Assembly (NCBI GenBank): GCA_963924565.1
Contig: OZ004612.1
Coordinates: 26,350,001-26,414,000 of the forward strand
Length of the DNA: 64,000 nucleotides
Direction of reading: 5' to 3'
Origin: Ascidiella aspersa
Taxonomy: Eukaryota
How positions within the stretch are numbered: the stretch's first letter is position 1; each line of letters starts with the position of its first letter. The notes below the pieces were generated by a model. It searched no databases. It saw only the letters and a program-made list of their open reading frames with translations, and was not told the origin of the DNA. Both the position numbers and the translations under genes were made by a program. This document shows, one piece after another, positions 1 through 64,000 of this stretch.

Positions 1-3000
1 ACCACATATTAATTTGGTCCCAAATTATGGCAAATCACTTGAAGATATTTATTACTTGAATATGTGCACTATCATTTAATGTTACAAAAGTTCTGGGAAA
101 GACAATTAGACGCTCTATGGTTCGCTTAATGACTATGGTAGAATAATCATATATTAGGTAAAGGTAAAACAAAATCTAAATTTTGCGTCCAATATAAGGC
201 AAGTGGTACAACTGTAAAGTTGTTTTTAAAAAACTATAGCACATGATGGACATACAGGGTATTTTGTCTGAGACTTAATTTTCCTAACAAACTAATACAA
301 ACTTGTTAAAAAGGATAATTTCAAGGCACGAAAAAAGTTTAACCTGCAAGCGACATAATCACTTGTCCCTTTCGATTAGACGGAGCAGTTTCTCTCATTT
401 CTCTCCCACAAAAAGTTGCCGAGAATTCCCAGATGACGCTGTCGTGCGCACAACTTCCCTCCAAGGAAAAAAGTCACGCAACCGAGATAAAAAAATTACG
501 CGGCTGAATTTGGCAGACTCGATTTCCCGTGGGGCTTTTCCCAAAACTAAAGGTCGCCCGAACCAAACGCTGGAAACATCTACGACCGGATCTAAATATA
601 TAACACGGCGAATCAAATTGAAGCGAAGAGATAGCAAGAGGCTTGGGAATATTTTATTGGAAGCTTGTCCCAAAGGCACTGAGAGCAATCCTAGTAGGAA
701 GTTTTGTAAAAAGAGTCACCAAGTATTTTGTGCTATATAAGTTGAAACCACGTCCGTTTTTTCTTGCGACACTAACAAGATAAATTTGTATTGTTGTTGC
801 AACACGCAACGGATGTCTAAAGCCTGTGTTGCTTGATTCCCACTATATGAAGTTCTTAGTTGAAAAGTGCATTGGTCCTTACCTAGCTAAAAGCATTACC
901 AATGTTTTATCACAAATGGGTGTATACGCACACAGCTTACAAAAAGTTGCAAACGATTGGGGAATTTGAATCGACTCACAACTAATAAAACTGAATTTTA
1001 TTATTCACAAAATCCAAAATCCAGAAACTAACGCTAACCGGACAATTACGGAATGTTTTAACTATAATTAAATCAACGTTTGGCTAAACATATAAACGTA
1101 ATATATATTCATGAATGGGTGTGTGTGTAATCGGAGTAAGCCGGGTAAATAGCCACTTTTTGTTCACCCTGATGGTCAGTTCAAAACCAACCACAACCTA
1201 TAGACGTTTGTGCGAGCAATTACTCGATTGTTTTCCGCCAAACACTAGGCTGTGTAACTAATACAAACGTCGATTTATTCGTATGATATGTCCCTTGTAC
1301 ATGCTGTACTCCGACAAAGTTAGTGGGTTCTTGTTATAAAAAGTCGAATCAACGAATTATACATCCTATAAGCCCTGTGAACAATGTACTCGATTTCTAA
1401 ATGCAAAAATGTTCTATACATATTATACGGAGGACTGGCTAAAGGCGAGTAACGCAGTAATTAATCGTGTAAGGGTCGTTAACGATTTTTATCGAATACT
1501 TTTGCATCTAGAAATAAAGTGCATGCCATGAACGCAGGAATGGTGCAAATAAATGAGCTAATTAATGGCATTTGACTGACCAAGTCCCATTTATGCCTGA
1601 ACCCACGTTTAAGGTAATTACAACATACGAAAAATGATTTATTTTTGCGTGTCCATGAGGTGCTGCGTTCCAAGCTGTCTTTGACATTGACGTTGTTTTA
1701 TTATGTGGTGTGTCACCAAATCGCAGCTTGCTTGAAGTTCAACTTTATTGAAAATCAGTTGGACCAGACATAAAGGTTTCAATTAAGTCGGCTCATTTAT
1801 AGTTTTTGTGCATTAAACCATCTAAAAGATCCAGTGTTGCAAACAAGTGTACTTGAGTGTACTTAAGTCAAGTTATTAGTTTAAGTCAATTCAACACTAC
1901 AAAGATCTCAGTGTATATTATTGGTAATGCCTACTGTAAAATCAAACTCAAGTGATCCTTTTAAAAAAATGTGAAATAACCGTGTTAGAACTAGTTTTTC
2001 CCATATGTTTACCTTTACAATTAAACAAGGATTTCGGTGTCTGCGAAATTAGCTTACCATCTTAGCCAGCGGTTCGTCAAGGGATTAAAATCAGCTAATC
2101 AGCGTTCGGCTGATCAATAAACCCGTAAAAATAGCGCAGGCAATGCAAGTTTCTCCTATACCCGAAAAGGGCAAAATTTGTTTATTGGTGTTGACGTACA
2201 GGCAGGGCGCAAAAATGTGATGGACTGTCTGTGTAATCTTCTCAAGCTTGGCAGGGCTTCAGAGGCGCGGACGAAATTATGTCAGTCGTCAGGGGGGTAG
2301 GGGGGGGGGGACGGAGACGGTTAAACCCCGACTGTCAGGCGAGGTGTAAAAACGGCAACAAAGGCATTAGCGCAACTGCAAACATTCGACGCTCGGCCCG
2401 TCTGTAGTTTGACTGAGGCAAGGTAAACGCCCTCTCCGTTGGTGGCACTTTTTCGTGGCGGATGACCGTTTAACGCTACATCTGCAGAACCGTGTCGCTT
2501 TATGGTAGACGGCATTTTCTAAACCGCGGACAATTTTATTGCTGTCGAAAAAGCCACACAAGCCAATTTCCGTTGTTTTTACCTGTTTTTGAATTTAAGG
2601 CTGATGTTTCGAGAGAAGTGTAGCGTATATCAGATATTTGGAGGTTGTCATTTATTGCATTCAAACGTTTATTTATTCAACTTTCAGTAATTTTTCTTTT
2701 TTTGTTAATTCAAATTTCCATCCGTTGTCGACACAAAAAATATAAATACGTAGAAGTAACCACGACGAATGAGTTCGAAAATCGGGATAGGACCTACACC
2801 TGTTGGAATATGTCCTAAATTATTCGAAAAAGTCCTAAATGGCTGGATCTCACTTGAAATTCTTGCATTTGAAGATTTATTTATCGAAAGAGATAATTTT
2901 TATTTTTTTGATTGGTCAAATTTCTATCCGTTGTATACTGTGCTGCTATTTCCAGTTTAGTCTGGTCAATAAGGTTCGTCGTCTCTTGCATTTTAACAAT

Positions 3001-4860
3001 TAAAAGTTTTGGTAACCTCATCCTGAGAAACATGTTCGGCTAATTTATCGTGATGTTTAAAAGTTTTGTAGCACGAAGTAATTTGTATTTGCAGTTTAGT
3101 ATACTGTTTATGTCAAAACTAATTTACAATATTTTTACCTGCTGTCGATTAATTGTGTTTATTAAAAAGTAATAATAGAAGTACTAATGCCGGCATGAGG
3201 CTTGTGGTTGTTTGCAATATTGGTTTAATTGCTAAACGTTGGAATTTGCTTTGCAAAGAAACGCTGTACAAAATTTAATTATTTAAAATGGTTTTAGTGG
3301 TTTGTGTAACCTCAAAAACTCATTACCATATTGCCACGATTAAGCCGGTCTCAGCGGAACTCAAAACCAGCACTCTTGTCTCTGGAAGGTGACAAATCAC
3401 TTTGCCGCTCTGACACAGTTTAACCTTTGACCCTTTTCGCCATCTCTTGCGCGCCAGAAAGGATTGAATCCGTGGCACCGTGGCACAACAAGCTCAGTGG
3501 CTGCGACCTTTTAAAGAAAATTACTTTTCGACTTAAAAAGTCCCCGGCATCCTACGCCGGCACAGGAATGTCAAACTGGATTGGTTCGCGGCATACTTGT
3601 CCATTTGGGCGCCGTTAAGGCAGTGTGTGCAGTGTGCAACACTTATGGGTCATTTACAAAGTGTTGGGCTTCTTTAGCTTTGGTTGTTTAAACAAATGGT
3701 GTTACTTTTGTAGAATTGCAGCACTCTAAGCGAGGGAATTCCGGTTCTATTGCTTAAAAACAGTTGTCTCCCTATTTCGCGCTCTTATTTGAATTGAATT
3801 ACTCATCGCAATTTGATTAATTACTCAACCGTCGCTATCGCCTCTTTGGTGGCTACAGAGCAGTTGAGGTTTCAATATTCGGCAATTGAGGCTAAATTTG
3901 TGTTTTTTATTATGACTTCAGAGAACTTCCTTGTGAATTTCAGTGACTTTAAATTAGAGCAGTGGGTGCACAAAACATAATAAATCCGTATGAGAGGTTC
4001 TCTACTCTTAAATAAAATTAAAAAACACTGTATTACAGTGTTAGACAAACTTTAGTTAAAAAATATTTTTTTTTTAGTTGTTTTATCTAAAGAATAAAGG
4101 ACCAACACACAATTCTTGTTTGGTTCGCTGATATACTGCATTGGTAAAAAAAAGCAATAAAGGCATAACCCAAGTATGATTTCAAATGAGTATCTACACA
4201 ACATATTGTAATTTTTACCATTTAAAACGACAACAAAATTATAATTTTTATATAAATACTTTTCTTCAACAATACATAATATAACCTCAAATATCATTCT
4301 TTGCATTTAAAACAGTCTATTGCACTAACTAAGGCATCAAGTTAGTTTTGGTACAAAACTTGAAACATATTTCGTCTCTATCAAATTGCCTATTCAGGGC
4401 CATTTCAAAGAGCTGCGTATATGAAATATTGTCTGGGTGAAAGGGCATACAGTGTTTTTCCATGATAATGATATAGATTCGGATATAACTGTTGCACAAA
4501 ATTGTGCCTCCAACGTCGAAAACGGGGCCCATAAGAACAGGGTTTGAATTCAAATTGCAGTTTACGACATTCAGTAACAATAAAGGGCGGATATTATCGA
4601 GTGACTTCCAAGGGATTTACTTCAATGGTGACCACATTAAAGCGAAAGGTTTTTTCTTTGGATTGTGGAAAGTTATACACTGCTTTCCCAGTGAATTACA
4701 CGTTTGGGAGAAATTCCGTCCTTTATACTTTAAGTGGCCGAACGAAAACAGCAATAAAAGATAAATTTCTATTTGTTGCGATTGTGTTTGCTTTGCGAAA
4801 TATTGGTCAGGGCCGTGTCCAATATTTCTTAAAGTTTATTATGAATTATTGATGCCAATG

Positions 4861-5088: not shown

Positions 5089-5605
5089 TTTTTTACCATT
5101 TCGTCAGGACGTGTGTAGACTTCACAGAAGCGATACCGAAACATGTGGATTCTACCAATAAACGGAGCTTAAAAGCTATAACGCGACAAAATCGAAAAAC
5201 TTCAAAAAAACAACGCAAAGGTTCCCAAGCCGCTCAGCTTACGACTTTAAAAACGTAAACGGGAATAAAAAAGTGGAAAATCGTGTGTGGGTGGGTTTGA
5301 TCCCTCCTCCCACACCAAATAAACTATAGCAAACCTCAGGCTTTGAATGAAATCGCGACATTGTATTACGTCACAAGGCGCGTGCGGCGACATCAAAGGC
5401 CTACCTGGCGGAGGGGAATCACCGTCTCGATGGCGGATCCGTTTCGCGAACCGTGTTTCGTCGCGGATCTAATGACGCTCTCGTGTTTAGACGAGCCTCT
5501 TCAAAGGTGCGCGGGTAACGTTATACGTTAGGAGTGCCGCCGCTACATCTGATGCTAATACTACTGCTGCTGCTTCTGCTGGTGCTGCAGTTGTATTGCT
5601 GCCTA

Positions 5606-5989
5606 TAGGGATGTCTGATATTAGACGTTTTATATCGGTGCCGATATACGTTATTTTAGACAAACTGTATCGCGACCAAATGCCAAGTTTACGCCATTGC
5701 TTTGCTCAAATAAGCAAAAAATTATCTTACAAGACATTAAAAGGCATTATTTCCTGGTTATTTGGCTAATATTTTCGACGTGGTTAGGCCCCTTAGCCTG
5801 TTCTGCTATATTACAATGTTTAATTTTTTTCTTTTAAGGTAGAAATCGCTTCGTTGAATCGCACATTATGTCTAAAATTATTAATTTGGCATGGGATCGG
5901 CACCGGTCCACCTTAGTATCGGACATAACCAATGCTACCAATTGATATCACGTATCGGCGCCGATCCGATATTATCGGACATCCCTCTA
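5606..5989. mobile_element. hAT-like MITE with TAGGGATG termini and CCGAT/ATCGG subterminal repeats
   Basis: AGGGATGTCTGATA ... TATCGGACATCCCT inverted ends and multiple ATCGG/CCGAT motifs. Flanks GCTGCCTA / GCTGCAAT form a degenerate 8-bp TSD. Confidence 0.7.
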
Positions 5990-7054
5990 GCTGCAATGCC
6001 AAATTTGGGGAAATTTTCCACATGTGTTACGTTTTGCTGCAGTGGAACCACTATTTTACTATAAATTCAAAACCACTATTTTGCTATACAAGTTATACTT
6101 GAGTATATTAAAGCTTGAAATTAATTAAAATTGCTCCAAGCGCCTTAGATTTAGATGATGAGGGAAGAGAGTGAATTCAATTTGCGTTGACCTCGCTAAA
6201 ATTACTCTTTTAATATATTACCCACTCGCGTAGCAGCTGAAGATCATTCGCGAACCACAAGTACAGTGGTATAGGTGTACGACGTTTCAAGAACCACTGT
6301 TTTACAGCATATAATGTCTGATAACGCGTGTGTCAGCTCTTGTGCAAACCTTAAAGGGCAGCGTTTTGCTTATATCTATACCCACTATTATTTATATGTT
6401 TTGTACTTTATAAACTTCTGACTCATTGGCTAAAATTCGGATACAGTATATAAGGATTTTTGAATATTACATATAATAGGGCTCATGCAATTGTCTTTAT
6501 TTAGCAATTTAACAAAGTTGTCAAACCCCAATTACTGTAAACTCAGATCATTATCATCGGATGGTTTAAAGGGGCGCTGAGAAATCGCCTGATCGACGTT
6601 GAGCAATTTGTCCAGTTTACAAGACCCAACAAAGACACCTACATTGTACCACTTGCCCGAAACAAGGCCATCAAAACAGCGGCGTCAAAAAATCGAAAAG
6701 ATGGGGCGCGAAGTGTAGGGTTTCGGCAACACGTTTTGGTACTTATACGTTTAGAGGGCGACCCTTCGAAATCCTTCCAAACGCGCGAAACTGGAGAGGG
6801 GCTATTAAAATCGTTTTTTTTTTTTGGGGGGGGGGGGTGTTAAGGGGGTCGTTAATCGCGTTTCAGCCCCGTATCACTGACATGTGCCCACGTCTTTCAA
6901 ATTTTCGCTCTTGCCAAATCGTGGCCGTTAAGGGAATGGTGCTTCTCGCAAATTACTGCGCAGTTCTCGGGACAACATAAGGTAATTTAATAGTTTTTTG
7001 TGCAATCGGTCATGGCTTTTTGAAAACAATTAAACGAAGCAATAATCCGGTCTC

Positions 7055-7690
7055 GCTATGTCTCCAATGCTATTCGAAACCCTTATTATTATGTTAGTTT
7101 CTACCCTATTTTTAAGGTTTGACTTTGCTGACCGCGAATAAGTTTAAGATGCCTCAACTATTCTATTTCAGTAAATCTATAAACAATCTTTGAGGCCTTA
7201 AAGCAATTACGCGCGAAAACGCTATTTCTCCAATGCTATTCGAAACCCTTATTATAATGTTAGTTGCTACCCTATTTTTAAGGTTTGACTTTGCTGACCG
7301 CGAATAAGTTTAAGACGCCTCAACTATTCTATTTCAGTAAATCTATAAACAATCTTTGAGGCCTTAAAGCAATTACGCGCGAAAACGCTATTTCTCCAAT
7401 GCTATTCGAAACCCTTATTATTATGTTAGTTTCTACCCTATTTTTAAGGTTTGACTTTGCTGACCGCGAATAAGTTTAAGACGCCTCAACTATTCTATTT
7501 CAGTAAATCTATAAACAATCTTTGAGGCCTTAAAGCAATTACGCGCGAAAACGCTATTTCTCCAATGCTATTCGAAACCCTTATTATTATGTTAGTTTCT
7601 ACCCTACTTTTTAAGGTTTGACTATGCTGACCGCGATGAAGTTTAAGAGGCCTTAATGAATATTCAATTACAGTAAACCTATAAATAATC
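7055..7690. repeat. 166-bp tandem repeat, ~3.8 copies
   Basis: TCTCCAATGCTATTCGAAACCC recurs at 7061, 7227, 7393 and 7559. The first three units are nearly identical and the fourth diverges. Confidence 0.95.
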
Positions 7691-9169
7691 GTGGTTCTTA
7701 AGTCGCCGAAATGATGAAATAGCGTTCGTCATGCGCTCCTATAGAGAAATACCACGGCGCCGAAGTTGGATCATAGTTGAAAACGACACGAAAGATCCTC
7801 TTACATCACATGTCTACGCAAAAAACTTCAGTCGGCTAAAATTGCGCACATTTCAAACATGCGGAATAAAATGAAGGCAAATCGTAGCAATTTAGCAGGA
7901 CGAATGCAGTCCGATTTATCAATCACGCGAACCCGACCCAAAATCCCCGAGAATTACATTTTTCCAGTTTTCCATGTTTCCCGATGGATTGCTTTCGCAT
8001 GCATGCTGCACGCGTGCCGCTTTTGTGCGTTATTAAATCAGGCATTGGCTTGCTCCACGAAAAATCGCACGAGTCCGAATGCCACGTGTTAGAAGCAGAT
8101 CAAAGTCGGCGAGATCACAGGCGGTGCTGGTAGCAACACGCGTGAGCCAAAACTAATTGGAGAGAGATTGAATTTCAGCCGGTCGATAACTTATAGGCGT
8201 TTGAACTGAAATTGTGACGGGGAGAAGGTGTTTAAAAAAACACGAGCTTCTATTAACTTCCTGTGTTTTTTTACTTTGCCGCTTTTAAATCGAGGTTAAC
8301 ATGCCGCCACTATTGTTTATTAGTTGTTCTTTTTTTGGAAGCTCTGACATGCAAATCGGTCCAAAATTAATTCGAAATAACAAACTACATTCCCACCAAC
8401 TTCGAGAAAACTCTATGACTGAAACAAACTTGATTTCAAGCTTTCAAACCTGAAATGTATTAAGCAAAACTTTAAAGTAATTTTATAAAGCTAATGTAAA
8501 GAAACTTGGGAAATATAATTAAAGCCGTCAGTTAAAGTTTGAAATCCGAAGCAAGAAAAACTGAATAACGTTTGTAACACGTTTTTATATGAGTTCGTTT
8601 TGTAAAGCAGCTGGATAACCCCTTAAAAGCGAGATAACATAATCCCAATCCGGTTGTATGAAATGGCCTTAAAAAATTACCTAAACGGTTGCAATGATTT
8701 ATTGAGAGAATAAAAGGAAAAACATGTTATAAAAAATAAAAAATGCATTGATTGCAATTACTTTAACTTTCAAACAAATGTTTATAAAAAAATTAAAAAT
8801 TGTAATGATTGCCAAACCGCAGTTCTAACTTAACATTAAGATCAGTGAAAAGCCAAAACTGTCTCACTAAATATAGCCATATATTCGTGTATAGGTATAG
8901 GTTTTTGCCTACTTAGTAAAATTTACAGGATGTACAATAAGGTATGTTTTGATTTTGGGGTATTTCAGTTCTGTTAGACGATAATGAGCTAGGTCCTGAC
9001 TAACACATCGAAAGTTCTTTTGGTGCAGAATTGACCAGAAAGTTAGACAATTTTAGGAAAGGGGCGCAGTTTATTTTAAAAATTTCTTGTTTGCCAAGCA
9101 ACCTGCAGGTTCAAAGGCTAAGTGTTCACCTGGGTGCAAATACCCCAACATTCCCGCCAAGTAACAAAC

Positions 9170-9780
9170 AACATAGTTGCGTAGGTGGCACAACGCAAAC
9201 TCCCAGCGAGCGTGCGAACCAAAGTTATAAGGGGGCGCGTCGCCGCCTAAATCAACAGGGGCGTCGAAACACCAAGATAGATAGAGAAAAAACCCAAGGA
9301 TTAAAAGGCGTAATGCGTCACGCTCCAGTGAACTTCAACGACCGGGCAAACGCGACACGTGACGGATCACGTGACGCCGGTTACGCTCCGTTGCGCACAG
9401 AGCAGCGGCGGCTAAAAATGATAATAAGTAGTTAGGCGGCGATGACACATCGATTCTATAGAGCGCCGGTCCATTGTGACTCATCACTTGTCGCGCCAGC
9501 TAGTGTGTTTGCGCATGCGCGGGCGCGTGCAATCGCGATCGCCTTACGTATCGACTTGCCCCCTCACCCTTGCCCCCTAAATAATGCCCCCCCTCGAGTT
9601 TGACGAAGCGAAAAGGGTTACACCGAGTGTCGGTTTTGTTTTGGGTGCTCCGTGTCGCGAAGGTAGGGGGAGGGGGCACCGGTCACGATTTTTTCGCGGG
9701 GGGGGGGGGAGATTATTCATTCCCTTGTCATTTCGCCGAACTGTTGAGGCATTTTTCCCACACCGAACGCAAATTTAGTG
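9170..9780. promoter_or_regulatory. Promoter-like CpG island (NRF1, tandem CACGTG E-boxes, AP-1, G/C runs)
   Basis: GCGCATGCGC at 9511-9520, CACGTG at 9356 and 9368, TGACTCA ~9477, C-runs at 9559-9593 and G-runs at 9666-9709. Confidence 0.4.
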
Positions 9781-11486
9781 TGTGAAACATTTAAGATATT
9801 CTGATGGAAGATATAGGGCAATTGCTGTGTTTGTTCATGGTAAAGCTGCTAAGATGATACACTGATTTCCTTTTCCTCAAAATAACATGAGACACAACTT
9901 GATTTTATTTCGTGGTGATGTTTTGTGTGTTGTGGGCGATTTTTAGAGGCGGGTAGCTTACTTTATTTAATTACCTTGCAAAAATGTGACGGCTCATTTT
10001 TTCAGGAAACTGAATTATATGTTATTTATTGAAATTCCATAACTATTGCAGTAAAATGTGATTTAACAATCGTGTTTATGGTTTTCTCATTGAAAATGTA
10101 TACCAAATTATTAAACGTTTAACAAGTCGAAAATGCCATGTAGATATTCATGGGTAAAATATTAAACCAAAAAGCGACCACTTGCAACGCAAGATTAGTT
10201 CTATAGTGTTTTGATGATATTTAAGAAAATGTGCGAGGATTGTATTTGGGTGAAACAAATAGAATTGAAACAGCTTGCAAAATTTTCTGTCCATGACGCA
10301 TTGAGTTGGTTGTGTTGGGGTCATAGAAAACAACTGTCGCAACATGTTTTGGGTAAACTCACCCTTGTACTGTATATGGGGCAGTGATATTAATCACCCT
10401 TTAGGTCCCAGCTAAACAGAATGGAAACGTGAATCATTCGACATTAGAACACGAGCGAAACCCTTTCAGCATTTTGCCTTTTCCGGTCGACGACAAACCT
10501 CTTAAAATTCCGCGTTCGGCAACAAATTTTCCAAAATTTTGATATAAAAGCATAACGTGGGAGAAACGGAACACGGAAAAGGTAATTTTGTAAGTAGCGA
10601 GGACAAGGTATGGTCACGTTTTTTACTGGGGAAAGCGGATTTGCAAATCCGAAGATTACGCACCGGACCTATTTGGATTCCGGGACTTGAATCGTATTAA
10701 AACAGCCGAAAAAAATAGGAAAAGGATGTTGTAAAAGGTGCTTATATTTAAAAAGTTATACTTGTCGTTTCAAGGTTAGGGGAGGAAATTCAAACTTATG
10801 GGTCACGAAAGTAATCACAGTGCCGATGTTTATTGCAATTGAAAATAGATTAAACCGACAGATACAGGATGTTTACGTTTTCCTTATTTTTGACCCAATT
10901 GTCATTAAGTTACATTTGGGTCTCTGATTTTTCTTTCAAACATGTCGAAAATTACTTATAGGGGGTTAAAGCGCTTTATAGGGAGTTAAAGCGTTTAAAA
11001 TTCGGTAAAAATTAATACAAAGTCACCGCGACCTATTGCTATGGTGACTGTCTTTTTTTCCGATTTGCCTCAACGGGCGGATCTAATTTGGCCAAATCAG
11101 TATACATTGGTGCACGTGGTTAGAAATGACCTCTGTGATGTGGTATACGATCCATATCCACCGAACCTCACGAAAGAGAAAGAATACAGAGCTAAACTTA
11201 TTGGCAAACTATACAGCGAGACGGTCCCGGGTATTTGAAGTCGCCATTTAAAGGAGTCTATTATAACTGGGGTCTATATAGCGCGCGGCCGCCGAAGCCT
11301 GACTAAGCCTTCATTTAGTGGCGAAGGTTGATGTGGCGAAATCGGTCGGCGGCCCTTCAAAGCGAAATGCGAACCATGACGGAATAATTTCGCCCAGGAT
11401 CGACCAAACACCAAAACGGCCAGGTTGACTGGCCAATTAGTTTGACTGGCCAAGCTGAATATGAATTTCAGAAGCCATAAAATAAG

Positions 11487-13030: not shown

Positions 13031-13254
13031 CCATCATACAGCATTGCCGTAAGGAATACAATTCCCACCTGAACGCCTGCCTTACATTTGCGCACACATA
13101 ACGCCGCTGTGTGAGTAGCAAAAAACATGGCGCAAACCAACATATAGGCCAAAATGGCAGGAGCAGAAAAACAGTGCACAGGACCAGGACAATGTATTTA
13201 ATGACTGACATAGCAACGAGAGGCCACTGTGCAATGGTCTAAGTTACTATAAGT

Positions 13255-21681: not shown

Positions 21682-23620
<1,939 letters not shown>

Positions 23621-53670: not shown

Positions 53671-54504
53671 AAACGGTGTGTTTTTGTCGCTACAAACAAA
53701 GCAAAACAAGTACTCTGTGCAGCTGGGGTTAGTCTTTGATCACGAAACACACAGGCAGCGCCCTTAATCCAAGCAAATGGCAACACGCAGCCAAAACCGG
53801 TTGCAGCTTCCCACTTTAAAAAGGGGGCTAAGTCCCATGGGGCAAGTTCACCCCGGAGTACACGAACCCAAAAGACTGCCTTCGATCGCTATTTGAAGAC
53901 CTCGTTTGAAGTAAATCATAGAGGCGCCGCAAAACCTACTTTGCTTAAGAAGACTTACGCTAGTCAGAAAAGCAAAATTATTTCGTTTTGTTGAGTTAAG
54001 AATAGTCTAATGCAAATAGGCCTCGTTTTTTGTCCAGTTTGACTGTTTTTACCCCAACGTACGTTGAAGACAGCCAAATGGTTTGCGGTTGCAAGGAGGT
54101 TGCCAAAGCGGCCACGGTTTGTTTGCCGGTCCCCGAAACCCGACGCCATTTGGCCGGGCGCAAAACCCTTTTTTCCGGACCGCGCGTTTGCCTGCAAATA
54201 ATTCACTTCTGACAGATGTAACCTTTGTAATTGCGCCGGGGGGAAAAAAACTCTCAGGCGCTTAGCCAGCATGTCTTTGCTTTGCGAGATTGGCTTGCAA
54301 GTTTCGGCCGCCTATACGTCATCCACTGGTGGTGAGCATGTTTACAAACCGTAATGCGTTGAAGGGTCTAATTATCGGTGTCTGCGAAATTTCACTTGAA
54401 GCAAAGAGTTCGTTGGAGGATTTTCCAACTGACGTCGAACAAATCCGTTTTGTAAATACGCTAAGAAAACTAATTACGTTGTTTGTCCGTTTTAGTACTC
54501 GCAT

Positions 54505-55350
54505 TGTGTTTTTATGTGGTTTGTATTGTTTTGTTTGGGTGATTGTTTGTGGGTTTGTGTGATTGTTTGTGCGTGTTTGCGTTTGTGCGTTTGTGTTGTT
54601 TTATTTGTGCGTTTGTGCGTTTGTGTGTTTGTGTGTTTGTGTGTTTGTGTTTTGGTGCGGTTGTGCTTTTATGCGTTTGTGCGTGTGCGAGTGTGTGTTT
54701 GTGTGTGTTTGCGGTTGTGCGTTTGTAGGTTTTTGGGTTTGTACGGTTGTGCGTTTGTGTTGTTTTATTTGTGTNNNNNNNNNNNNNNNNNNNNNNNNNN
54801 NNNNNNNNNNNNNNNNNNNNNNNNNNNNNNNNNNNNNNNNNNNNNNNNNNNNNNNNNNNNNNNNNNNNNNNNNNNNNNNNNNNNNNNNNNNNNNNNNNNN
54901 NNNNNNNNNNNNNNNNNNNNNNNNNNNNNNNNNNNNNNNNNNNNNNNNNNNNNNNNNNNNNNNNNNNNNNNNNNNNNNNNNNNNNNNNNNNNNNNNNNNN
55001 NNNNNNNNNNNNNNNNNNNNNNNNNNNNNNNNNNNNNNNNNNNNNNNNNNNNNNNNNNNNNNNNNNNNNNNNNNNNNNNNNNNNNNNNNNNNNNNNNNNN
55101 NNNNNNNNNNNNNNNNNNNNNNGTGCTTTTATGCGTTTGTGCGTGTGCGAGTGTGTGTTTGTGTGTGTTTGCGGTTGTGCGTTTGTGGGTTTGTACGGTT
55201 GTGCGTTTTTGTTGTTTTATTTGTACGTTTGTGTGACTGAGTTGTTCGCTTAGTGAATTTATACATTAGTGTTTCTCAGCGGTTTTCTCGTAGTGTCTAT
55301 ATGTTTGCTTGTCTGCTTGTTTGTTTGTTTGTTTGTTTGTTTGTTTGTGC
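54505..55350. repeat. GT-rich (TTTG/TGTG/TGCG) low-complexity tandem array spanning an assembly gap
   Basis: Nearly A-free T/G sequence. The block GTGCTTTTATGCGTTTGTGCGTGTGCGAGTG occurs on both sides of the gap. Confidence 0.9.
54775..55122. other. Assembly gap (348 N)
   Basis: Run of N. Confidence 1.
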
Positions 55351-57413
55351 GGGTGGATTTGCTGGATATACCAACTCATCATTTTTGTAAAATGATGCCT
55401 CGAACACAACACACTAGAACAACCTATCCGCTACACCCATTCAATTTTTGAACTCACGCAGCGGTAGTTTGTTTCAGAAACGAAATTCCTGACGAACCGA
55501 AAAATAGCTACAACAACTCCGGAATCAATTAGCGTCTCGGTCGCCCGCCCAAGGCCGCGGAGCTTCACACGTAGCCCCATGGGGCGAATCAATTAGCCGG
55601 GGGCCTGCTCTCTGTTGCGGCTAACCCAGCAAAGCAACAGCAGCAACAACATTCCCCCGGGGCAGTGGGTAAAATGCCGGGCGAGGACTTTTTCTCACGC
55701 TCAGTGAACGGGTAATTAAGTTGGGACGAGGCTTATCTCTTAGCAGGACGACGCCCGAGTCTTGGCGCCTAAGCCTGGGCCCCAAACTGTCTGCCTGATT
55801 GAGAATGATACGTGCGCGCGTAAAGACAACTTTGCTGATGCCCTGTGTTTTGCGTTGGCGTGATTTGGCTACTGTTAAATTGAACTGCCCCATATTTCTT
55901 CCGAGTTTGCGTCACATTAGAGCTTCCTGCGAACGCCTGATTACGGATATCGTATTCCGCTTCACTTTAAGTGAGCTTATCTGAAAAAAACGGCTTTCAT
56001 CCCATAGTTTACGGTTGTTTTGTTGTTTTGATGGGAATGTTAAATATATTGATGCTAAATCGAACGGAATGTTTCGTGAATAAGTTGTTGTTTTCTGCTT
56101 TAGCAAGGCATTGCCAATAATGCAATGCAACAGTGATAATGCATTTTTAATACTTTGTGTTGATTTCTATTCTTTTTCACACAAAATGGCGCATATAACG
56201 AAAGTTTTATCCAATACCATTTTTTCTCAGATTCAATAGGCAAAAACGCTGCAAAAAATACACGCAAAAATATATAAGTTTATCATTAGTTTAAGACATT
56301 GCATCGGGTATTTTTTAATTAATAATTAGTTGTTGTTAGTTGCAAATCGTTTTCTGGCTAAAATTTCGTACATTAGTTAGTGTTGTGGTCGTCAACCATA
56401 GAAAAGTTATTTAAAAATTAATTATCGGATAGATAATAAACAAAAGAGGGAACACTGGTGTTACCAATACAATCATTAGACATTTTTGTTCCGAAGAGAG
56501 TTGTAAAATCTCTGTTTCAACTCGCGGTATTCCAGAAACGACGTGAATTATTAAGGGCGGTTAAATAATGACATGCTGTTCTTCTGTTGGATCAACAACA
56601 GTCTATCAGCTTAGAGTTTTGTCCACATCTCGTGAATTTTATAACATTTGTTTGCCAAACTTTGTTGCAATGCACAAAGGTTCAAATGTATAGTTTTTAA
56701 ATGAACTCGCGAAACTATATTCTTACATAAGAAACAAAACGAAGCTTATAATATATACTCTGTAGCGCGTTTGTGTTTGGATGCAGAACACAGTTCAGGT
56801 TACAGCGAGACATCGTATTGGATCCAAAGCCTAATTCGAAAAGCATCTGGTCATTTTGCCACCCCGGCCTTCTGAAGAGTGTCGCACAGGCGTGGCTCAT
56901 TACGGGATTTCGCTCGGGATTATTCGTCTACAATTCAGCGCAGAAAAGTTATACGGGCCTGGATTTGGTCACCACCTGTCCTGTATAGGTTTCTGTTTTT
57001 GAGCAATTCTGCTCGCTTAGCCACTATTACAGCTTTCGCAGTGCGCGTAAACCGCAGTAGAGAAAGATTCTATGGGAACTGAGAGGACAGAAACAAATCT
57101 TCCTATGCAAAACGGCGTGTGGTCTCACTAGGAAGAGATAAAAACGACTGACGGGGCTTTACGGCCAGGCCAATTGGCAACAATAGTCGGCAACAAGATA
57201 CAAGTCAGGTGCGGGCTTCGAGGAGTCGGTGACGCTAGGGCAGAGCAAGTCTTTTGGTTGTAGGTCGAGCGAGGCCGATTCACACGCTTGCCACTGCCAG
57301 GGGTCGTTGACCTTTGATGCAGCGGAAAAAGCTGCCGTTTAAGGTTTTAGGATGTTTCCGTTGCGCTAGCGAATTTGCACGAACGATTAAGGCGGGATTA
57401 AATTAGATTTATT

Positions 57414-57583: not shown

Positions 57584-57585
57584 AA

Positions 57586-57672: not shown

Positions 57673-59233
57673 ATAGGGTAACTATACCTAAATTAGACTT
57701 CAGTTTGAGATACAGTTTAGGAAGGATCTTCATAGCATTTCAAGACCATTGGCAAAGTGTTGAAAGTGATTCCCCGTTATAATACGTATTAAAACAAAAT
57801 TATTATACTTCATAAACTCGAAAAAACATAAGGAATCATTACCTTAATATACGATCCTTTTAGCACTGCAAAAACTACTTAAGGATTAAAAAAGCAAGAC
57901 TAAAAATCATTTAAACACGTTTTTTTTTGTAAGTTAAAAAACATCCGGTATTGTGTGAAAATATGAAGTGTTTACATTCCTTTTTTTTTGAAGAATGAAG
58001 CAAAAAAAAGAACGAAGCAGGAATACTTTGTGTTGGGTATTCCAACCAATTCGCTCAATAAAAAAATTTAACGATTGTCATTAGGCTTACAAGAAAAATC
58101 TTTCCATGAAAAATAAACGCGAGCGTAACCAACGTTTTCCTGCAATTCTTTTGGCCTGAAAAATCCTTCGTAATGTTCCCAAATGAGTGCAAAAAATCGT
58201 GTTCACACCTGTGCATCTCAAATAGTGTACGGAAATCGAGGATTAACTTGCGTTTTTCTCCGCTTCCAAACTTCAACCTCATAAAAAAAAACTTTTCTTG
58301 TTTAACCAAACTACTTGTTCTACATATAACATTACCAGTAGATGAGATGTATATACGCGTTCCCGCTAAGTCGTTAAGTCCATAAAACGGCTGCGCGAGT
58401 CAGGTAGGAGAACGATTCTTAATTTCGCGGCCGCCGGAGTATTGAATATCCGAGCGGCGCAGCGACAGCCCGGTACATTATATTTAAATTGCACTGTTTC
58501 GCCTTGATATAGCGACGTCGGCGCCTTTGATTTTGGTCGCTTACACCCTAGTAACTGTCGTTCGAGCTTCCGTTTCGCAAAACGCACCGAGATCAATTTA
58601 TTCCTCACCTTAAACTCCGGGGTAAACCGCAGTCTGTGTCTTTCGAAGAATCGCCTTCAAGACTATCGACTGTCGGATTTGTCAAAGTCAAAAACGAACC
58701 TGTTGTGTGTGTTTAAGTCTGAAAGAAGAAAGTGCACCGCTTTGAAGGGAATTGAGATATAAGAGCAGTTATGGAAGGAATATTCAACGTTGTACAACGT
58801 TTCCAAACCATGTATAGGGGTAATTTTGTTTTACGACCTTGTGTATTTCTCAGACAATTGCGCCTTGTTATTCATGGTGAACAATACTGGTAGGATTGTG
58901 GAATTGCATAAGCAATCCATAAATAGTAACAAAGCTTTAGTAAAAATAACTTGATTTTAACCTAATACTCTTCCATTGGTTTCTAATGATGCAAAAGTTA
59001 ACAAAATGGTAAAAAAAAGGGTTCTATTATCTAAAATATTTGTTTTAACATTTTTAGTTGTATTGGTAAATGGAATATTTTTTTTACCAACTTAGGAACA
59101 TCACTTTTACAAAAAAATATGAGCAAGAATTTGCAAAAAGGAAACTGCTCTAGTTATTTTTTTAATAATAATTTCTTCTACAATTTCTTTTAGTAAAGCT
59201 TGCTCTAAAGTTAATAAAAAATTATCAGAATCA

Positions 59234-59556: not shown

Positions 59557-60116
59557 TCAGAATCTACAAAAGGTTTTTTAATAAGTTTACAAAAAAATGA
59601 GAGTGTACTAAGTTATCAGTGTGAATCAACAACAAATCTGCAGCCATATCATGTACTGTAGGTAGCCAACATATATAAATAGCACTTTACAAATGGTCCA
59701 CAAAAGGCCTTCATAAACCACGATAAGCTTTTTTACCACGCGGAAAATCCAATTTACCCAGGTTGACCTTCAATGCGTCACAGTCTCGAAACTGTTCGTT
59801 AAGGTCGCGCGCACTCGAGCATGACGCAAATTCGGGCAAATGTAGATTAATGGAACTCGGCGGCGGATAATTTGCCTCGGCAGATGTTTGGGATGGGGAG
59901 AGGGGGCGGCGTTGTAAAAAACACCGTGTTTCGATAGTTTAGGTCGCAGCGTATAGGCCAAAGGACTGGGAATTGATCGAACAGGGCTTCTCAGGTCCAT
60001 TTTCTTGTCGCACACGGGACTTTCGACAAAAACATTATACACGAAACGATTTGGTTGATACGGGATTGTTTCGTGCTTTTTTTCCTTTGCATTCTATCAT
60101 GTTTTAAATTTTAACA

Positions 60117-60211: not shown

Positions 60212-61708
60212 TTACGATAAAAATGCACATTTTGCCGGAGTCGAACCCGGTTTATTTTTCACCGAATTCGAGGGTGATTCTTTTGGGCAAACACGGTTGG
60301 TGAACCACTGGGTTTGGCGTACGGCAAAAGTGGGGGAAAGTATGCTCGTTAAACTTGTCAGGTGTGAACACGGGCTCGAAACTTCGACCAAATTTTGTTC
60401 GACCCAGGGCGTCGAAATTAAAGTCAGGCCGCTCTGCAAACACCCTGGGCACACATTTTCGATTGCAGAGCCCCCTAATTCACCCACTACCCTCCCCCAC
60501 GTACCCTCGTTCCCCCTTGGGTTTGTGTGAAGCGAGCCTGATAGCGGAAAAGATTGGAAAATTATCCGCGCCTAATCAAACTGATGCGCGCCGCCCGGGG
60601 GACCCCGACACAAATTATCTCGTTTTACCCTCATTTCGGGGGTTGTTCGGTGCACCCTGGGACGCAATAAACGCGAGGGGAAGGGGCAAGCGGTTGGGTG
60701 GCTTTGCTGTTTTGGAAGTGCAGGGTTAGGGGTTTACTGTGTAAATATTGGGTTAAGTTGGGTTAGGTATAGGTTAAAACGAAATAGGCTTGGGGTTTTG
60801 GTGACACATAAACCGAATTTACGAAAATTGAACAACTATGTGTTGTTAAGGTTTAAATTTGTACTTTAGGAATGCAAATTTTATAATAATCTTCAACTTT
60901 GACAGAACATATTTTTTAATATTGAGTAGTTGACTGTATATATATATATACATAAATTCAAGCGTTTTTTGTATGGTTTAGAATAAGTGTACTTTAGCTT
61001 TTGCCATTCGCGATGAACAAATTACCATTTATAAGGTTTAATCAATCAAGTTAAACTGAATCTTAGAGGTAAAGATTTTCCATCGTTCGTTATAAAATAA
61101 GGGCCGGGTTTTTGTCAAGGCAATGTACACAGCTGACAAACCTTCCGTTTCGATGAAGAAAAACACTTGAAAAAAACGACCAAAGCCGTTCCTCCTGCAG
61201 CCAATTTGGAGGCACATTGCATTAGTCTCTGTGTGAAGGCAAGCATAATCGCTGTTCAAACAATAGCGAACCGCCGAAAGCCGAAAACAAGACCTCGCAT
61301 AGGGGCTAATAGTTTAAAACTGCGTCAAAAACGCGTAATTTGGGCGAATTTGCGCGCCCCAATTTAAACGATTACCCGCCAAGGACTATATACGCGCGCA
61401 GGAAAGCGCCTTTACCTATCATTTACGCAGTTAATGATCGGGATTCCGGATTGATCCCAAAGTGCGCGCGCGCTAATGAAATAGAGCGCTGCGAATTATC
61501 CTGGGCGCATTATCTTGCTCTTAGCCTAAGTGGATTTAGTTTGGAGAGACAACACAGGAGCGGATGCTTTGATAGGAGTCTAACGTTCGCGTTTTTGTTT
61601 GTAGTTTGCGATTTGGCTGACGGAATTGTTTTGACGTTCGCACATTACCGAAAGGCCATAGTCGTCTATTTGGAAGTTGTTTCTAGCGTTTAAAAGTATA
61701 GTCTATAT

Positions 61709-62454: not shown

Positions 62455-62558
62455 TGATCATACAAGTATACGCATGATAACGTTGTTTCAAGATGATGTC
62501 GATTTACTCGACTTTTTTGGTTTTGTAATTCATTATCAAGCTACATTACAGATCCGTA
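62455..62558 (-). mobile_element. MITE family B, right arm
   Basis: TCAAGATGATGTCGATTTACTCGACTTTTTTGGTTTTGTAATTCATTATCAAGCTACATTACAGATCCG is the reverse complement of the 41317 arm. Confidence 0.75.
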
Positions 62559-64000
62559 CATGGTGTACCCAAACAAACTTTCAAGGTATTACAATAATTC
62601 CATAGTTTTAGATTTCTATATTCACCGACAATCTAGGCAAAAATCAGAGTGCAATTAAATATTGAAGTCAGCTTCCATTTTTTTTACGATTCTTTCTTAT
62701 TTTTAAAGGCGCTCCGGGTACTTTATTCCATTTTTACCCTTTCCCAATAGAAAACGTCCTTGGGCGTGGGGATTTCTCGTGCTGGCGTGCCGTCCAGATG
62801 GCTGACGAATTTTCCAAAGGCGGATAGCGATAAGAAGTGAGGCGACCGCGATCAATCTTACTTTCCACCACTGGCCTCCATTTGGCACGCTTCCTAATCG
62901 ACCCGGGCCCTGACTGACAGGTGCCAACGGAAAATCCATCGTGACGTATTTTGGCCTCGGCTTATGACGTCACAAACAGTCGGGGAAAGCACCCGAACGT
63001 GTCCAAGGTCGCGGTGTCGCTTTTTCGGCAGGGCTATTTATGTTAGACGCGTTTTTAAAGGAGAATTAGGCTTCCGAAGGTTTTGGCTACAGCAGATGGA
63101 CGGGTATTTTTAAGAGTCGTGTTGTCTGTATATCTATCGCAGCCTGCATACTTGAGAAAAGGCCATACCGCGTCACGACGACAAAATGTCGCGAGGCGTC
63201 ATTTGGCATGACCACGATATATGGATAAAAAGCGATAAAAAAATTAAAATTTATTTGATATGTTGAATAAATGCTACCCATATTGCAATAATATTCATTC
63301 TATACGTCGACGTACAACATCCAACCAACCAAGATACTAAAAACTAAATAACCAGGAAATATAAACCAAAAAATATTTGTAATAGTTTTAGGGTATAGGA
63401 ATCATTTAAATTAAAACTCCAAATTTTAACTTCTAAACGTCGTATTTTAGAGCAACAAAGTTGCTTTGTAATGTCCTCGATTTTGCCGCATGACCAGTAG
63501 TTTTTATTATTATCTCTTTTGGCTTATATATTATAAATATTAATATTTCGTACTTCCGCTATATGTTATTCGATACAATTTCAGTGCTTAGAACAACTTT
63601 ATTTATGTACTATTTAAAAGGATTTGAAATAGTCGGTAAGCGTATCCACACTCAATGTAAGGGTAATAGGCCATTTTAAGCTGATCCCAAGGTTGTTTAA
63701 ATTAACAAAACATATTGGGTAAACAAAAGTACTTCATATATTCTCCAACTTGCGTCTGAAAACATTCAAATAAAAAAGCACAGCATATTATGCAAGCATC
63801 CTTAAAAACATTATATAACACCGGAGTTGCTTAAACAAACACTGGCTACAGCAAAATTATTGAACCGTTTTTTCTGTGGAAGAAGAAGCAAAATACCCTT
63901 TTCTCTCAAAATAGAACAACACATATTTGGTATAGGAGTTTCGTTCAGTATGAGTTCTTCGAAAACAGCTATTCGTAGATCGCGGCTTTGTGGGTTGACT

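What the first reader, a model, noticed from the sequence alone, without database searches (positions are those of the whole stretch)
300..63250. Quasi-periodic GC/CpG islands at ~1.1-1.3 kb spacing across the whole window
Reading through, 200-600 bp GC/CpG-rich blocks alternate with AT-rich troughs with notable regularity. Approximate centres (kb): 0.5, 1.6, 2.4, 3.5, 4.6, 5.4, 6.8, 8.0, 9.4, 10.6, 11.3, 12.1, 13.9 ... 42.1, 43.1, 43.9, 44.9, 45.9, 47.0, 48.2, 49.5, 50.6, 51.8 ... 55.7, 57.1, 58.5, 59.9, 60.5, 61.4, 63.0. That is about 50-55 blocks by eye. Apart from one local duplication the islands show no evident homology to each other and are non-coding, so neither a repeat nor exons explains them. 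The pattern continues through the introns (24.5, 25.5 kb), with exons occupying some peaks. Inference: a sequence-encoded beads-on-a-string architecture, either regularly spaced cis-regulatory modules or a ~6-nucleosome-scale chromatin or mutation-bias pattern. This is my best candidate for an undescribed system here.
Basis: partly seen in the sequence, partly recalled or inferred. Interest (0 to 1): 0.75.

Follow-up and report, generated by a model that had tools for sequence, protein, structure and literature searches.

The report
GC-rich regulatory islands around Six1/2
About fifty short GC-rich, non-coding blocks surround a sea-squirt eye and organ development gene (Six1/2); they are spaced more evenly than chance but form no true repeating lattice, and they are most likely an ordinary dense cluster of gene switches.

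Summary
The islands are real.

The spacing is more even than random placement:
- Spacing CV is 0.43, against 0.66 for random placement.
- The autocorrelation dips to -0.19 at 550 bp and rises to +0.10 at 1150 bp.
- The spectrum has a broad hump at 0.9-1.6 kb.

There is no lattice. Shuffling the order of islands and troughs reproduces the whole autocorrelation and spectrum. Island pairs are depleted only below 750 bp, and a comb test is not robust.

The window is the Six1/2 homeobox locus of an ascidian related to Phallusia. The same autocorrelation recurs in 8 pieces beside other homeobox genes, but not in 16 arbitrary pieces (p=0.002).

The islands are non-coding and untranscribed in one RNA run. 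They are nearly free of repeats and carry about half the variant density of the troughs.

Best reading: a cluster of GC-rich cis-regulatory modules, a kind published for Phallusia and Ciona, separated by AT-rich spacer that tolerates transposons.

The scan had already noted such islands in other windows of this genome (s1-790819, s1-801572, s1-791225).

The parts
391..612 (.). GC-rich non-coding island
   Evidence: segmentation
2125..2531 (.). GC-rich non-coding island
3357..3662 (.). GC-rich non-coding island
5276..5616 (.). GC-rich non-coding island
6595..6958 (.). GC-rich island; long open frame (p=0.01), not checked further
7901..8191 (.). GC-rich non-coding island
9103..9771 (.). GC-rich non-coding island; its ORF 9031-9435 has no Pfam match
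11109..11445 (.). GC-rich non-coding island
11986..12282 (.). GC-rich non-coding island
13076..13185 (.). small GC-rich island
13558..14210 (.). GC-rich non-coding island; holds the only non-coding block (13741-13980) that aligns to the related ascidian contig L030
14827..14956 (.). small GC-rich island
15564..15776 (.). GC-rich non-coding island
16172..16331 (.). small GC-rich island
17623..18083 (.). GC-rich non-coding island; 17985-18107 is duplicated at 18833-18959 (89%)
18761..18929 (.). GC-rich island, second copy of the local duplication
19476..19957 (.). GC-rich island; long open frame (p=0.015), but ORF 19325-19876 has no Pfam match
20614..21109 (.). GC-rich island just upstream of Six1/2 exon 1 (candidate promoter or 5' UTR region; inferred)
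21607..22462 (+). island holding Six1/2 exon 1 (coding 21757-22353, SIX1_SD domain)
23605..23799 (+). island holding the Six1/2 homeodomain exon (PF00046 match at 23624-23764)
24463..24617 (.). intronic GC-rich island
25424..25587 (.). intronic GC-rich island
26172..26773 (+). island holding the last Six1/2 coding exon (ORF 26233-26757; 61% identical to the C-terminus of Phallusia Six12)
27251..27458 (.). GC-rich island downstream of Six1/2
30363..30607 (.). GC-rich non-coding island
31485..31818 (.). GC-rich non-coding island
33934..34357 (.). GC-rich non-coding island
36311..36617 (.). GC-rich non-coding island
37219..37445 (.). GC-rich non-coding island
38792..38900 (.). small GC-rich island; part of the local duplication 38636-38841 with 39051-39241
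39181..39752 (.). GC-rich non-coding island; ORF 39048-39353 has no Pfam match
40843..41105 (.). GC-rich non-coding island
41889..42346 (.). GC-rich non-coding island; no RNA reads
42994..43242 (.). GC-rich non-coding island; no RNA reads; 0 variants in run X2
43808..43991 (.). GC-rich non-coding island; no RNA reads
44661..45258 (.). GC-rich non-coding island; no RNA reads
45780..46076 (.). GC-rich island; long open frame (p=0.025), but ORF 45809-46321 has no Pfam match and there are no RNA reads
46873..47137 (.). GC-rich non-coding island; no RNA reads
49268..49620 (.). GC-rich non-coding island
51573..52031 (.). GC-rich non-coding island
53706..53918 (.). GC-rich non-coding island
54039..54381 (.). 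GC-rich non-coding island
55448..55932 (.). GC-rich non-coding island
56805..57370 (.). GC-rich non-coding island
58368..58672 (.). GC-rich non-coding island
59742..60012 (.). GC-rich non-coding island
60257..60749 (.). GC-rich island; long open frame (p=0.015), but ORF 60355-60729 has no Pfam match
61169..61609 (.). GC-rich non-coding island; ORF 61340-61693 has no Pfam match
62736..63166 (.). GC-rich non-coding island
54544..55208 (.). GT-rich 8-bp minisatellite in a trough, interrupted by the assembly gap 54775-55122
50628..51126 (.). AT-rich interspersed repeat of about 500 bp in a trough, with many copies on all chromosomes
47214..47400 (.). very high-copy repeat in a trough (read depth hundreds of times the single-copy level; also seen in RNA)
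7054..7690 (.). 166-bp tandem repeat (3.8 copies) in a trough

Best explanation
The window is the regulatory landscape of the homeobox gene Six1/2 (sine oculis type) in an ascidian related to Phallusia.

The 300-400-bp GC-rich islands are most likely constrained cis-regulatory modules: enhancers, silencers and promoter-proximal elements. They sit at about 50% GC because they are packed with binding sites and are kept by selection.

The AT-rich troughs are unconstrained spacer. This DNA has drifted to the AT-rich mutational equilibrium and absorbs transposon and minisatellite insertions.

The apparent 1.1-1.3 kb period is short-range order, not a lattice. Islands almost never lie closer than about 750 bp centre to centre. 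Spacer lengths are gamma-like (shape about 3) rather than exponential. A dense one-dimensional packing of this kind gives one nearest-neighbour peak and an even density.

What is shown and what is inferred:
- Shown: the statistics, the gene, the absence of coding and of RNA in one run, the repeat exclusion, and the recurrence at homeobox loci.
- Inferred: that the islands are regulatory, and why short spacers are missing. Candidate reasons are a need for modules to act independently, room for a few nucleosomes between them, or many small insertions summing up in every spacer.
For: Gene and organism:
- The ORF at 21757-22353 matches Pfam SIX1_SD (E=1e-49).
- A homeodomain exon lies at 23624-23764.
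- Exon 1 is 94% and the last exon 61% identical to Phallusia mammillata Six12.

Islands and their spacing.

No lattice: the renewal shuffle reproduces the autocorrelation and spectrum, and pair distances are flat beyond the first shell.

Link to developmental genes:
- I took 8 of 8 fetched 10-kb pieces lying next to the best distinct homeodomain hits. Pooled, their autocorrelation is -0.194 at 500 bp and +0.089 at 1000 bp, almost the same as the window's.
- 16 arbitrary pieces give no negative lobe.
- Per piece, mean autocorrelation at 400-650 bp is -0.108 against +0.024, Mann-Whitney p=0.0022.
- Spacing CV is 0.43 in the window, 0.53 in the homeobox pieces and 0.77 in the arbitrary pieces.

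Non-coding:
- 8 of 49 islands have an unusually long open frame, and 2 of those are Six1/2 exons.
- 0 of 8 island ORFs outside Six1/2 match Pfam.
- There are no tRNA or Rfam matches.
- The RNA-seq run X6 has zero depth in 27 of 30 bins of 41501-47400. The 3 bins with reads are repeats.

Constraint:
- Against a second individual (X2), islands carry 11 SNPs in 1578 bp and troughs 38 in 2927 bp (one-sided p=0.04).
- 0 of 6 indels lie in islands. SNPs and indels together give p=0.012.
- Interspersed or self repeats cover 2% of island bases and 14% of trough bases.
- The one non-coding block that still aligns to the diverged relative L030 lies inside island 13558-14210. The reversed-sequence control gives 0 hits at the same score.

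Motifs: binding-site-like words are enriched in islands. TGACGTCA occurs 6 times against 0.3 expected, and CACGTG 16 against 5.6.

Literature:
- Madgwick et al. (bioRxiv 10.1101/371005; sections 13 and 14 read). ATAC peaks in Ciona and Phallusia are GC-richer than other non-exonic and exonic sequence and are conserved. They cluster around regulatory genes, at 5 or more per 10 kb.
- Li et al. 2007 (PMC2394749; passages read). Drosophila cis-regulatory modules have GC 0.45, against 0.37 for other non-coding DNA.
Against: - No chromatin accessibility, binding or reporter data were reachable, so a regulatory function is not shown for any island.
- The variant test is small (49 SNPs over 4.5 kb from one contig set). 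It weakens to p=0.10 if the 2 unplaced differences are counted as island, and AT-rich DNA may simply mutate or misalign more.
- Repeat exclusion is partly circular. The repeats are AT-rich, so an insertion makes a trough by definition.
- Cross-species support rests on a single block.
- The related contig L030 carries the same gene in a more compact locus, with few clear islands and no negative autocorrelation lobe. The regular architecture is therefore not shared across ascidians, and part of it may reflect genome expansion rather than function.
- The comparison sets are small (8 and 16 pieces). The arbitrary pieces sit at fixed coordinates, not random ones, and I did not check what they contain beyond one rDNA piece.
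- A simple hard-core model with a 300-bp minimum gap still under-predicts the autocorrelation dip (-0.115 +/- 0.024 against -0.186). The cause of the exclusion is unexplained.
Confidence: 0.6

Rival explanations
1. Neutral compositional mosaic. The islands are simply the older, single-copy DNA of the locus. The troughs are younger AT-rich DNA added by transposons, minisatellites and small insertions as this genome grew to 308 Mb. The even spacing arises because every spacer received many insertions. The islands need have no function.
For: - Repeats lie almost only in troughs (14% against 2% of bases).
- High-copy elements sit at 50628-51126 and 47214-47400.
- 7 of the 8 longest gaps hold detectable repeats, against about half of the shorter ones, and gap length correlates with repeat content (rho 0.34, p=0.02).
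- The relative's locus is much more compact. Intron 1 is about 300 bp there and about 1250 bp here. It also lacks the pattern.
Against: - Old unconstrained DNA should itself have decayed to the AT-rich equilibrium, yet the islands stay near 50% GC.
- Removing the detected repeats does not make the gaps more or less regular (CV 0.60 to 0.65).
- The pattern is tied to homeobox loci rather than being general.
- Islands carry about half the variants of troughs.
- Only 14% of trough bases are demonstrably repeats, though I had only 240 kb of genome to compare with.
Confidence: 0.2
2. A spacing-constrained chromatin scaffold. GC-rich units of about two nucleosomes, separated by enforced AT-rich linkers of 400 bp or more, are written into developmental loci. 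They would organise nucleosome arrays or seed Polycomb/Trithorax-type domains, and the spacing itself would be under selection.
For: - Short gaps are missing beyond what a 300-bp hard core explains.
- Island density is very even (Fano 0.21-0.33).
- The same autocorrelation appears at 8 homeobox loci.
- GC content is the main determinant of intrinsic nucleosome affinity, and GC-rich regions of about 600 bp mark enhancers in zebrafish (Veil et al. 2019, PMC6396415; passages read).
- CpG is not depleted in the islands (o/e 1.19).
Against: - There is no long-range phase and no negative correlation between successive spacings. The renewal shuffle explains every spectral feature.
- The comb test is not robust.
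- Spacing still varies from about 400 to 3100 bp.
- The related species' Six1/2 locus lacks the pattern.
- No chromatin data were available.
Confidence: 0.1
3. The islands are unannotated exons of coding or long non-coding genes, and the troughs are their introns.
For: - Exons in this genome are also GC-rich peaks. Three islands are Six1/2 exons.
- 6 islands outside the 2 Six1/2 exons that scored have long open frames, against about 2.4 expected by chance.
Against: - 0 of 8 island ORFs match Pfam.
- No RNA-seq reads lie on the six islands of 41501-47400 in run X6, although only about 6% of that run was read and it is one sample.
- Arbitrary loci, presumably genic, show narrower peaks and a different autocorrelation.
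Confidence: 0.05
4. Chance, or the eye imposing regularity on a noisy GC profile.
For:
- Any smoothed noise shows quasi-regular peaks.
Against: - The unsmoothed 50-bp autocorrelation has a dip that 0 of 400 random-placement simulations reach.
- The pattern replicates in independent loci.
Confidence: 0.03

Closest known systems
[quoted passage not shown]
   Same: - Short non-coding elements (median ATAC peak 119-219 bp there, islands about 300 bp here).
- GC-richer than other non-exonic DNA.
- Clustered at 5 or more per 10 kb next to transcription-factor genes. Here there are 5-8 per 8 kb at Six1/2 and at other homeobox genes.
- The organism here is a relative of Phallusia.
   Different: - Accessibility was not measured here. 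Islands are defined by composition only.
- That paper reports clustering, not a sub-random (even) spacing. I saw no statement on spacing in the sections I read, and its supplements were not opened.
Conserved non-coding element arrays (genomic regulatory blocks) around developmental genes in animals (Polychronopoulos et al. 2017, PMC5728398; Vavouri et al. 2007, PMC1852409; search listings and abstracts only)
   Same: Dense arrays of mutually unrelated, single-copy, non-coding blocks flanking and inside homeobox genes.
   Different: - Conservation could be shown here for one block only, because the available relative is too diverged.
- I recall that vertebrate CNEs are reported as relatively AT-rich. 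That comes from no call.
Elevated GC content of Drosophila cis-regulatory modules (Li et al. 2007, PMC2394749; passages read) and GC-rich high-nucleosome-affinity regions at zebrafish enhancers (Veil et al. 2019, PMC6396415; passages read)
   Same: Regulatory modules stand out from AT-rich non-coding DNA by GC content: 0.45 against 0.37 in flies, and 0.50 against 0.34 here. GC-rich blocks of a few hundred bp favour nucleosomes.
   Different: The contrast is sharper here, sharp enough to see the modules by eye. The spacing statistics are not part of those descriptions.
Vertebrate CpG islands
   Same: Blocks of 200-800 bp with GC of 0.5 or more and CpG o/e above 0.6.
   Different: - The surrounding DNA is not CpG-depleted (o/e 1.07 in troughs), so the defining contrast is absent.
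- Most islands are not at promoters.

Membership tests
Cluster of cis-regulatory modules / CORE / CNE array at a developmental gene | Elements are non-coding | tested here: met
   46 of 49 islands lie outside the Six1/2 exons. 0 of 8 island ORFs match Pfam. Long open frames are found in 6 islands outside the Six1/2 exons, against about 2.4 expected. There are no RNA reads on 6 islands in one run.
Cluster of cis-regulatory modules / CORE / CNE array at a developmental gene | Clustered in and around a developmental regulator gene, and not genome-wide | tested here: met
   The window holds Six1/2. The same pattern occurs in 8 pieces beside homeobox genes and not in 16 arbitrary pieces, p=0.0022. 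The samples are small.
Cluster of cis-regulatory modules / CORE / CNE array at a developmental gene | GC content above that of surrounding non-coding DNA (as reported for ascidian ATAC peaks) | tested here: met
   GC is 0.50 in islands and 0.338 in troughs.
Cluster of cis-regulatory modules / CORE / CNE array at a developmental gene | Sequence conservation or purifying selection | tested here: inconclusive
   One non-coding block aligns to the diverged relative, and it lies in an island. Variant density in islands is about half that of troughs, p=0.04, or p=0.10 in the worst case.
Cluster of cis-regulatory modules / CORE / CNE array at a developmental gene | Open chromatin or transcription-factor occupancy | not testable with these tools
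   No ATAC, ChIP or MNase run for this organism was listed.
Cluster of cis-regulatory modules / CORE / CNE array at a developmental gene | Enhancer activity in a reporter assay | not testable with these tools
   This is a bench experiment.
Periodic array (lattice or tandem repeat) | Long-range phase coherence at one period | tested here: not met
   The pair-distance histogram is flat beyond 1 kb. The renewal shuffle reproduces the autocorrelation and spectrum. The comb test gives p=0.018 and p=0.18 depending on threshold.
Periodic array (lattice or tandem repeat) | Units related in sequence | tested here: not met
   Self-BLAST finds only two local duplications among the 49 islands.
Vertebrate-type CpG islands | CpG o/e high against a CpG-depleted, methylated background | tested here: not met
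   CpG o/e is 1.19 in islands, 1.07 in troughs and 1.16 over the whole window.

The most novel reading that the evidence does not exclude
The spacing itself is functional. In this ascidian, developmental loci would be built from GC-rich modules of about two nucleosomes, kept at least 400-500 bp apart by AT-rich linkers. That would be a sequence-encoded chromatin scaffold (for nucleosome phasing, or for seeding Polycomb-type domains) rather than a mere collection of independent enhancers. The exclusion zone would then be maintained by selection.
Probability: 0.1. Interest if true: 0.7.

Novelty: new member of a known kind. Interest (0 to 1): 0.3.

Why it matters
If the reading holds, regulatory modules in this genome can be read straight from a GC profile. 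That would give a cheap map of candidate enhancers for Six1/2 and other developmental genes in a relative of a laboratory ascidian.

The one feature I did not find in print is that the modules are spaced more evenly than chance, with few neighbours closer than about 750 bp, and that the same statistics recur at other homeobox loci. That is a modest quantitative point. It bears on how closely enhancers can be packed and on how spacer DNA evolves.

It is not a new kind of system.

Tried and rejected
True periodicity: rejected. See the pair-distance histogram, serial correlation, renewal shuffle and comb test.

Vertebrate-type CpG islands: rejected.

Hidden exons: largely rejected.

RNA genes: none found.

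Transposons as the source of the islands: rejected. Islands are single-copy.

Transposons as the sole cause of gap lengths: not supported. Removing the detected repeats leaves the CV unchanged.

Repeat mapping with the whole-genome DNA search: it led nowhere. Only 39 of 8935 first-look candidates were scored, nearly all from one repeat family.

Cross-species conservation, attempt 2: the metagenome scan returned one usable relative (L030, with L031 and L032 overlapping it). It is too diverged. Only the exons and one non-coding block align.

Run X3 ('organism B'): I hoped it was a diverged relative. It gave low-depth pieces almost identical to the window, so it says nothing about conservation.

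Genome-wide sampling:
- I planned 40 seeded-random pieces and 40 pieces at 10 homeobox loci.
- The comparison therefore rests on 8 homeobox pieces against the 16 fixed-coordinate pieces fetched first. One of those 16 (L019) turned out to be rDNA. Leaving it out does not change the autocorrelation.

Literature: four searches found no paper on regular spacing of GC-rich islands or of enhancers. These cover only the held library, and no supplements were opened. Khoueiry et al. 2010, on a composition signature of ascidian enhancers, was seen only as a reference entry and was not read.

Full report
**What the window is.** The window is G000:C6:26350001-26414000 of a 308.6-Mb assembly with nine chromosome-sized contigs. 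It is AT-rich (GC 38.4%) and has no CpG depletion (CpG o/e 1.16).

The one clear gene is a Six1/2 (sine oculis type) homeobox gene on the + strand:
- Exon 1 (coding 21757-22353) matches Pfam SIX1_SD at E=1e-49.
- A homeodomain exon lies at 23624-23764.
- The last coding exon is the ORF at 26233-26757.

Exon 1 is 94% and the last exon 61% identical to the Six12 protein of Phallusia mammillata. The organism is therefore an ascidian related to Phallusia but not P. mammillata itself. Earlier notes of this scan also call the genome a sea squirt. There are no tRNA genes and no Rfam matches.

**The assembly gap.** The N run at 54775-55122 lies inside a GT-rich minisatellite (8-bp unit) that is present on both sides, at 54544-54765 and 55123-55208. 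It is in a non-coding trough, so reading frame is not an issue. Its true length is unknown. I left that trough out and the result did not change.

**Are the islands real?** Yes. GC in 200-bp windows has sd 0.085, against 0.034 expected from sampling. With Gaussian smoothing (sigma 60 bp), GC>0.43 and length of at least 100 bp, I get 49 islands:
- median length 307 bp;
- mean GC 0.50, against 0.338 in the troughs;
- 27% of the window.

Other settings give 30 to 58 islands. The other five (1.6, 4.6, 10.6, 48.2, 50.6 kb) are weak bumps that did not pass. These five are the ones that would fill gaps of double length.

The label 'CpG islands' does not fit. CpG o/e is 1.19 in islands and 1.07 in troughs, so CpG density simply follows GC.

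**Is the spacing regular?** More regular than chance, yes. The autocorrelation of unsmoothed 50-bp GC bins falls to -0.186 at 550 bp and rises to +0.100 at 1150 bp. The Welch spectrum has a broad hump at periods of 0.9-1.6 kb, with less power at longer periods. Centre-to-centre spacing has mean 1301 bp, median 1156 bp and CV 0.43. Gaps have CV 0.59.

I compared these values with 400 simulations in which the same islands were placed at random:

| Null model | Spacing CV | Autocorrelation minimum |
|---|---|---|
| Observed | 0.43 | -0.186 |
| Random placement, no minimum gap | 0.656 +/- 0.095 (p=0.01) | -0.038 +/- 0.036 (0 of 400 as low) |
| Random placement, 300-bp minimum gap | 0.514 (p about 0.1) | -0.115 +/- 0.024 |

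So a 300-bp minimum gap nearly reproduces the CV but not the dip. Island counts per 8 kb are 5, 8, 7, 6, 5, 7, 5, 6, giving a Fano factor of 0.21.

**Is it periodic?** No, not in the sense of a lattice.
- All island-pair distances are depleted below 750 bp (0, 1, 3 per 250-bp bin against 9.4 expected), show one first-neighbour peak at 750-1000 bp (14), and are flat after that.
- Successive spacings correlate at +0.10. A jittered lattice would give a clearly negative value.
- Shuffling the order of the real island and trough segments 500 times keeps only the length distributions, yet reproduces the autocorrelation at every lag tested. It also reproduces the spectral ratio (1.88 observed, 1.90 +/- 0.27 in shuffles).
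- A comb (Rayleigh-type) test finds a best period of 970 bp. It gives p=0.018 at one threshold and p=0.18 at another, which I do not count as robust.

The pattern is therefore short-range order: neighbouring islands avoid each other and spacers have a typical length. That criterion is not met, so the observation survives in this weaker form.

**Is it special to this locus?** It is special to a class of loci.

I fetched 16 pieces of 10 kb at two fixed coordinates on the chromosomes. Their pooled autocorrelation decays quickly (0.17 at 100 bp) and has no negative lobe. One of them, L019, is an rDNA unit. Leaving it out changes nothing.

I then took the best distinct homeodomain hits in the genome and fetched the 10 kb next to each. 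Their pooled autocorrelation is almost a copy of the window's:

| Lag (bp) | Homeobox pieces | Window |
|---|---|---|
| 50 | 0.53 | 0.565 |
| 100 | 0.42 | 0.45 |
| 500 | -0.194 | -0.157 |
| 1000 | +0.089 | +0.040 |
| 1050 | +0.085 | +0.064 |

Per piece, the mean autocorrelation at 400-650 bp is -0.108 for homeobox pieces and +0.024 for arbitrary pieces (Mann-Whitney p=0.0022). Spacing CV is 0.43 in the window, 0.53 in the homeobox pieces and 0.77 in the arbitrary pieces.

The scan's earlier notes describe the same kind of islands elsewhere in this genome: 17.4 Mb upstream on this chromosome, in front of a ZEB gene, and in a third window (s1-790819, s1-801572, s1-791225). I did not re-examine those places.

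**What are the islands?**

Not coding, and not RNA genes as far as I can see:
- 8 of 49 islands have an unusually long open frame, and 2 of those are Six1/2 exons.
- None of 8 island ORFs outside Six1/2 matches Pfam.
- An RNA-seq run of this species (X6, about 6% of it read) has no reads in 27 of 30 bins across 41501-47400, a stretch with six islands. The three bins with reads are repeats.

Not repeats:
- Matches to 240 kb of other genome sequence or to the window itself cover 2% of island bases and 14% of trough bases.
- The troughs hold short interspersed elements, an element of about 500 bp with copies on all chromosomes (50628-51126), a very high-copy element (47214-47400), and tandem arrays.

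Some sign of constraint:
- Contigs of a second individual (X2) differ from the window at 11 sites in 1578 island bases and at 38 sites in 2927 trough bases (0.70% against 1.30%; one-sided p=0.04, or p=0.10 if two unplaced differences are counted against me).
- None of its 6 indels lies in an island.

Motifs: words that look like binding sites are enriched in the islands. TGACGTCA occurs 6 times against 0.3 expected, and CACGTG 16 against 5.6.

**Cross-species check.** A scan of metagenome contigs found a 49.6-kb contig (L030) that encodes a Six1/2 exon 1 with 92% amino-acid identity.

At DNA level only four things align: the three exons, and one non-coding block at window 13741-13980. That block lies inside island 13558-14210. 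A reversed-sequence control gave no hit at that score. So 1 of 1 alignable non-coding blocks is in an island, which is anecdotal.

The relative's locus is much more compact. Its first intron is about 300 bp, against about 1250 bp here. It has few clear islands and no negative autocorrelation lobe. So the even architecture is not common to ascidians. This gives some weight to the neutral-expansion rival.

**What is known.** Madgwick et al. (bioRxiv 10.1101/371005; I read sections 13 and 14) mapped open chromatin in Ciona and Phallusia embryos. The peaks are short (medians 119-219 bp). They are GC-richer than other non-exonic and even exonic sequence, and are conserved within Ciona. They are clustered (5 or more peaks in 10 kb) next to genes for transcription and signalling.

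Li et al. 2007 (PMC2394749; passages read) found GC of 0.45 in Drosophila regulatory modules, against 0.37 in other non-coding DNA. Veil et al. 2019 (PMC6396415; passages read) describe GC-rich regions of about 600 bp with high nucleosome affinity at zebrafish enhancers.

The islands here fit this known kind. In four searches of the held library I found no paper on an even, sub-random spacing of such elements. That is not proof that none exists, and supplements were not opened.

**Verdict.** The evidence for function is indirect.

Why short spacers are missing remains open. Three possibilities are:
- modules need to act independently;
- a few nucleosomes must fit between them;
- many small insertions have summed up in every spacer.

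This is a new example of a known kind, with one modestly interesting quantitative feature.

Noticed in passing
L019 (G000:C5:12345001-12355000): One of the arbitrary comparison pieces is 55% GC throughout. It is a ribosomal DNA unit (18S, 5.8S, 28S) with 51-bp and 101-bp tandem repeats in the spacer. The repeat unit is about 7.5 kb.
   Followed up: yes
window 47214-47400 and 44062-44258: Read depth is hundreds of times (47214-47400) and about five times (44062-44258) the single-copy level in DNA runs. RNA reads are also present. These are high-copy, transcribed interspersed repeats lying in troughs.
   Followed up: partly
window 50628-51126: An AT-rich element of about 500 bp, with at least 37 copies at 74-82% identity spread over all nine chromosomes and many on C8 at 0.7-1.7 Mb. 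It is probably a non-autonomous transposon family.
   Followed up: no
window 41501-47400, run X3: A run labelled as a different organism (B) holds low-depth pieces almost identical to this stretch (0-5 differences per 151 bases). That suggests the same or a very close species is present in that sample, rather than a diverged relative.
   Followed up: no
G000:C6:26146865-26149358 and G000:C1:31038596-31040300: Two further Six-family genes. One lies about 200 kb upstream on the same chromosome, on the opposite strand. The other is on chromosome 1. The Six genes are therefore only partly linked here.
   Followed up: no
window islands (whole window): The palindrome TGACGTCA and its half-site variants are strongly over-represented in the non-coding islands (6 occurrences against 0.3 expected). 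Earlier notes of this scan report the same palindrome packed into coding exons of this genome.
   Followed up: no
window 38600-39353: A local tandem duplication of about 200 bp (38636-38841 and 39051-39241) gives two similar short ORFs. There is no Pfam match for the one ORF tested.
   Followed up: partly
arbitrary pieces L006-L021: Their pooled autocorrelation has a weak positive bump at 600-800 bp, with narrow GC peaks (median 204 bp). This may be the exon-intron rhythm of ordinary genes. I did not check it against gene models.
   Followed up: no
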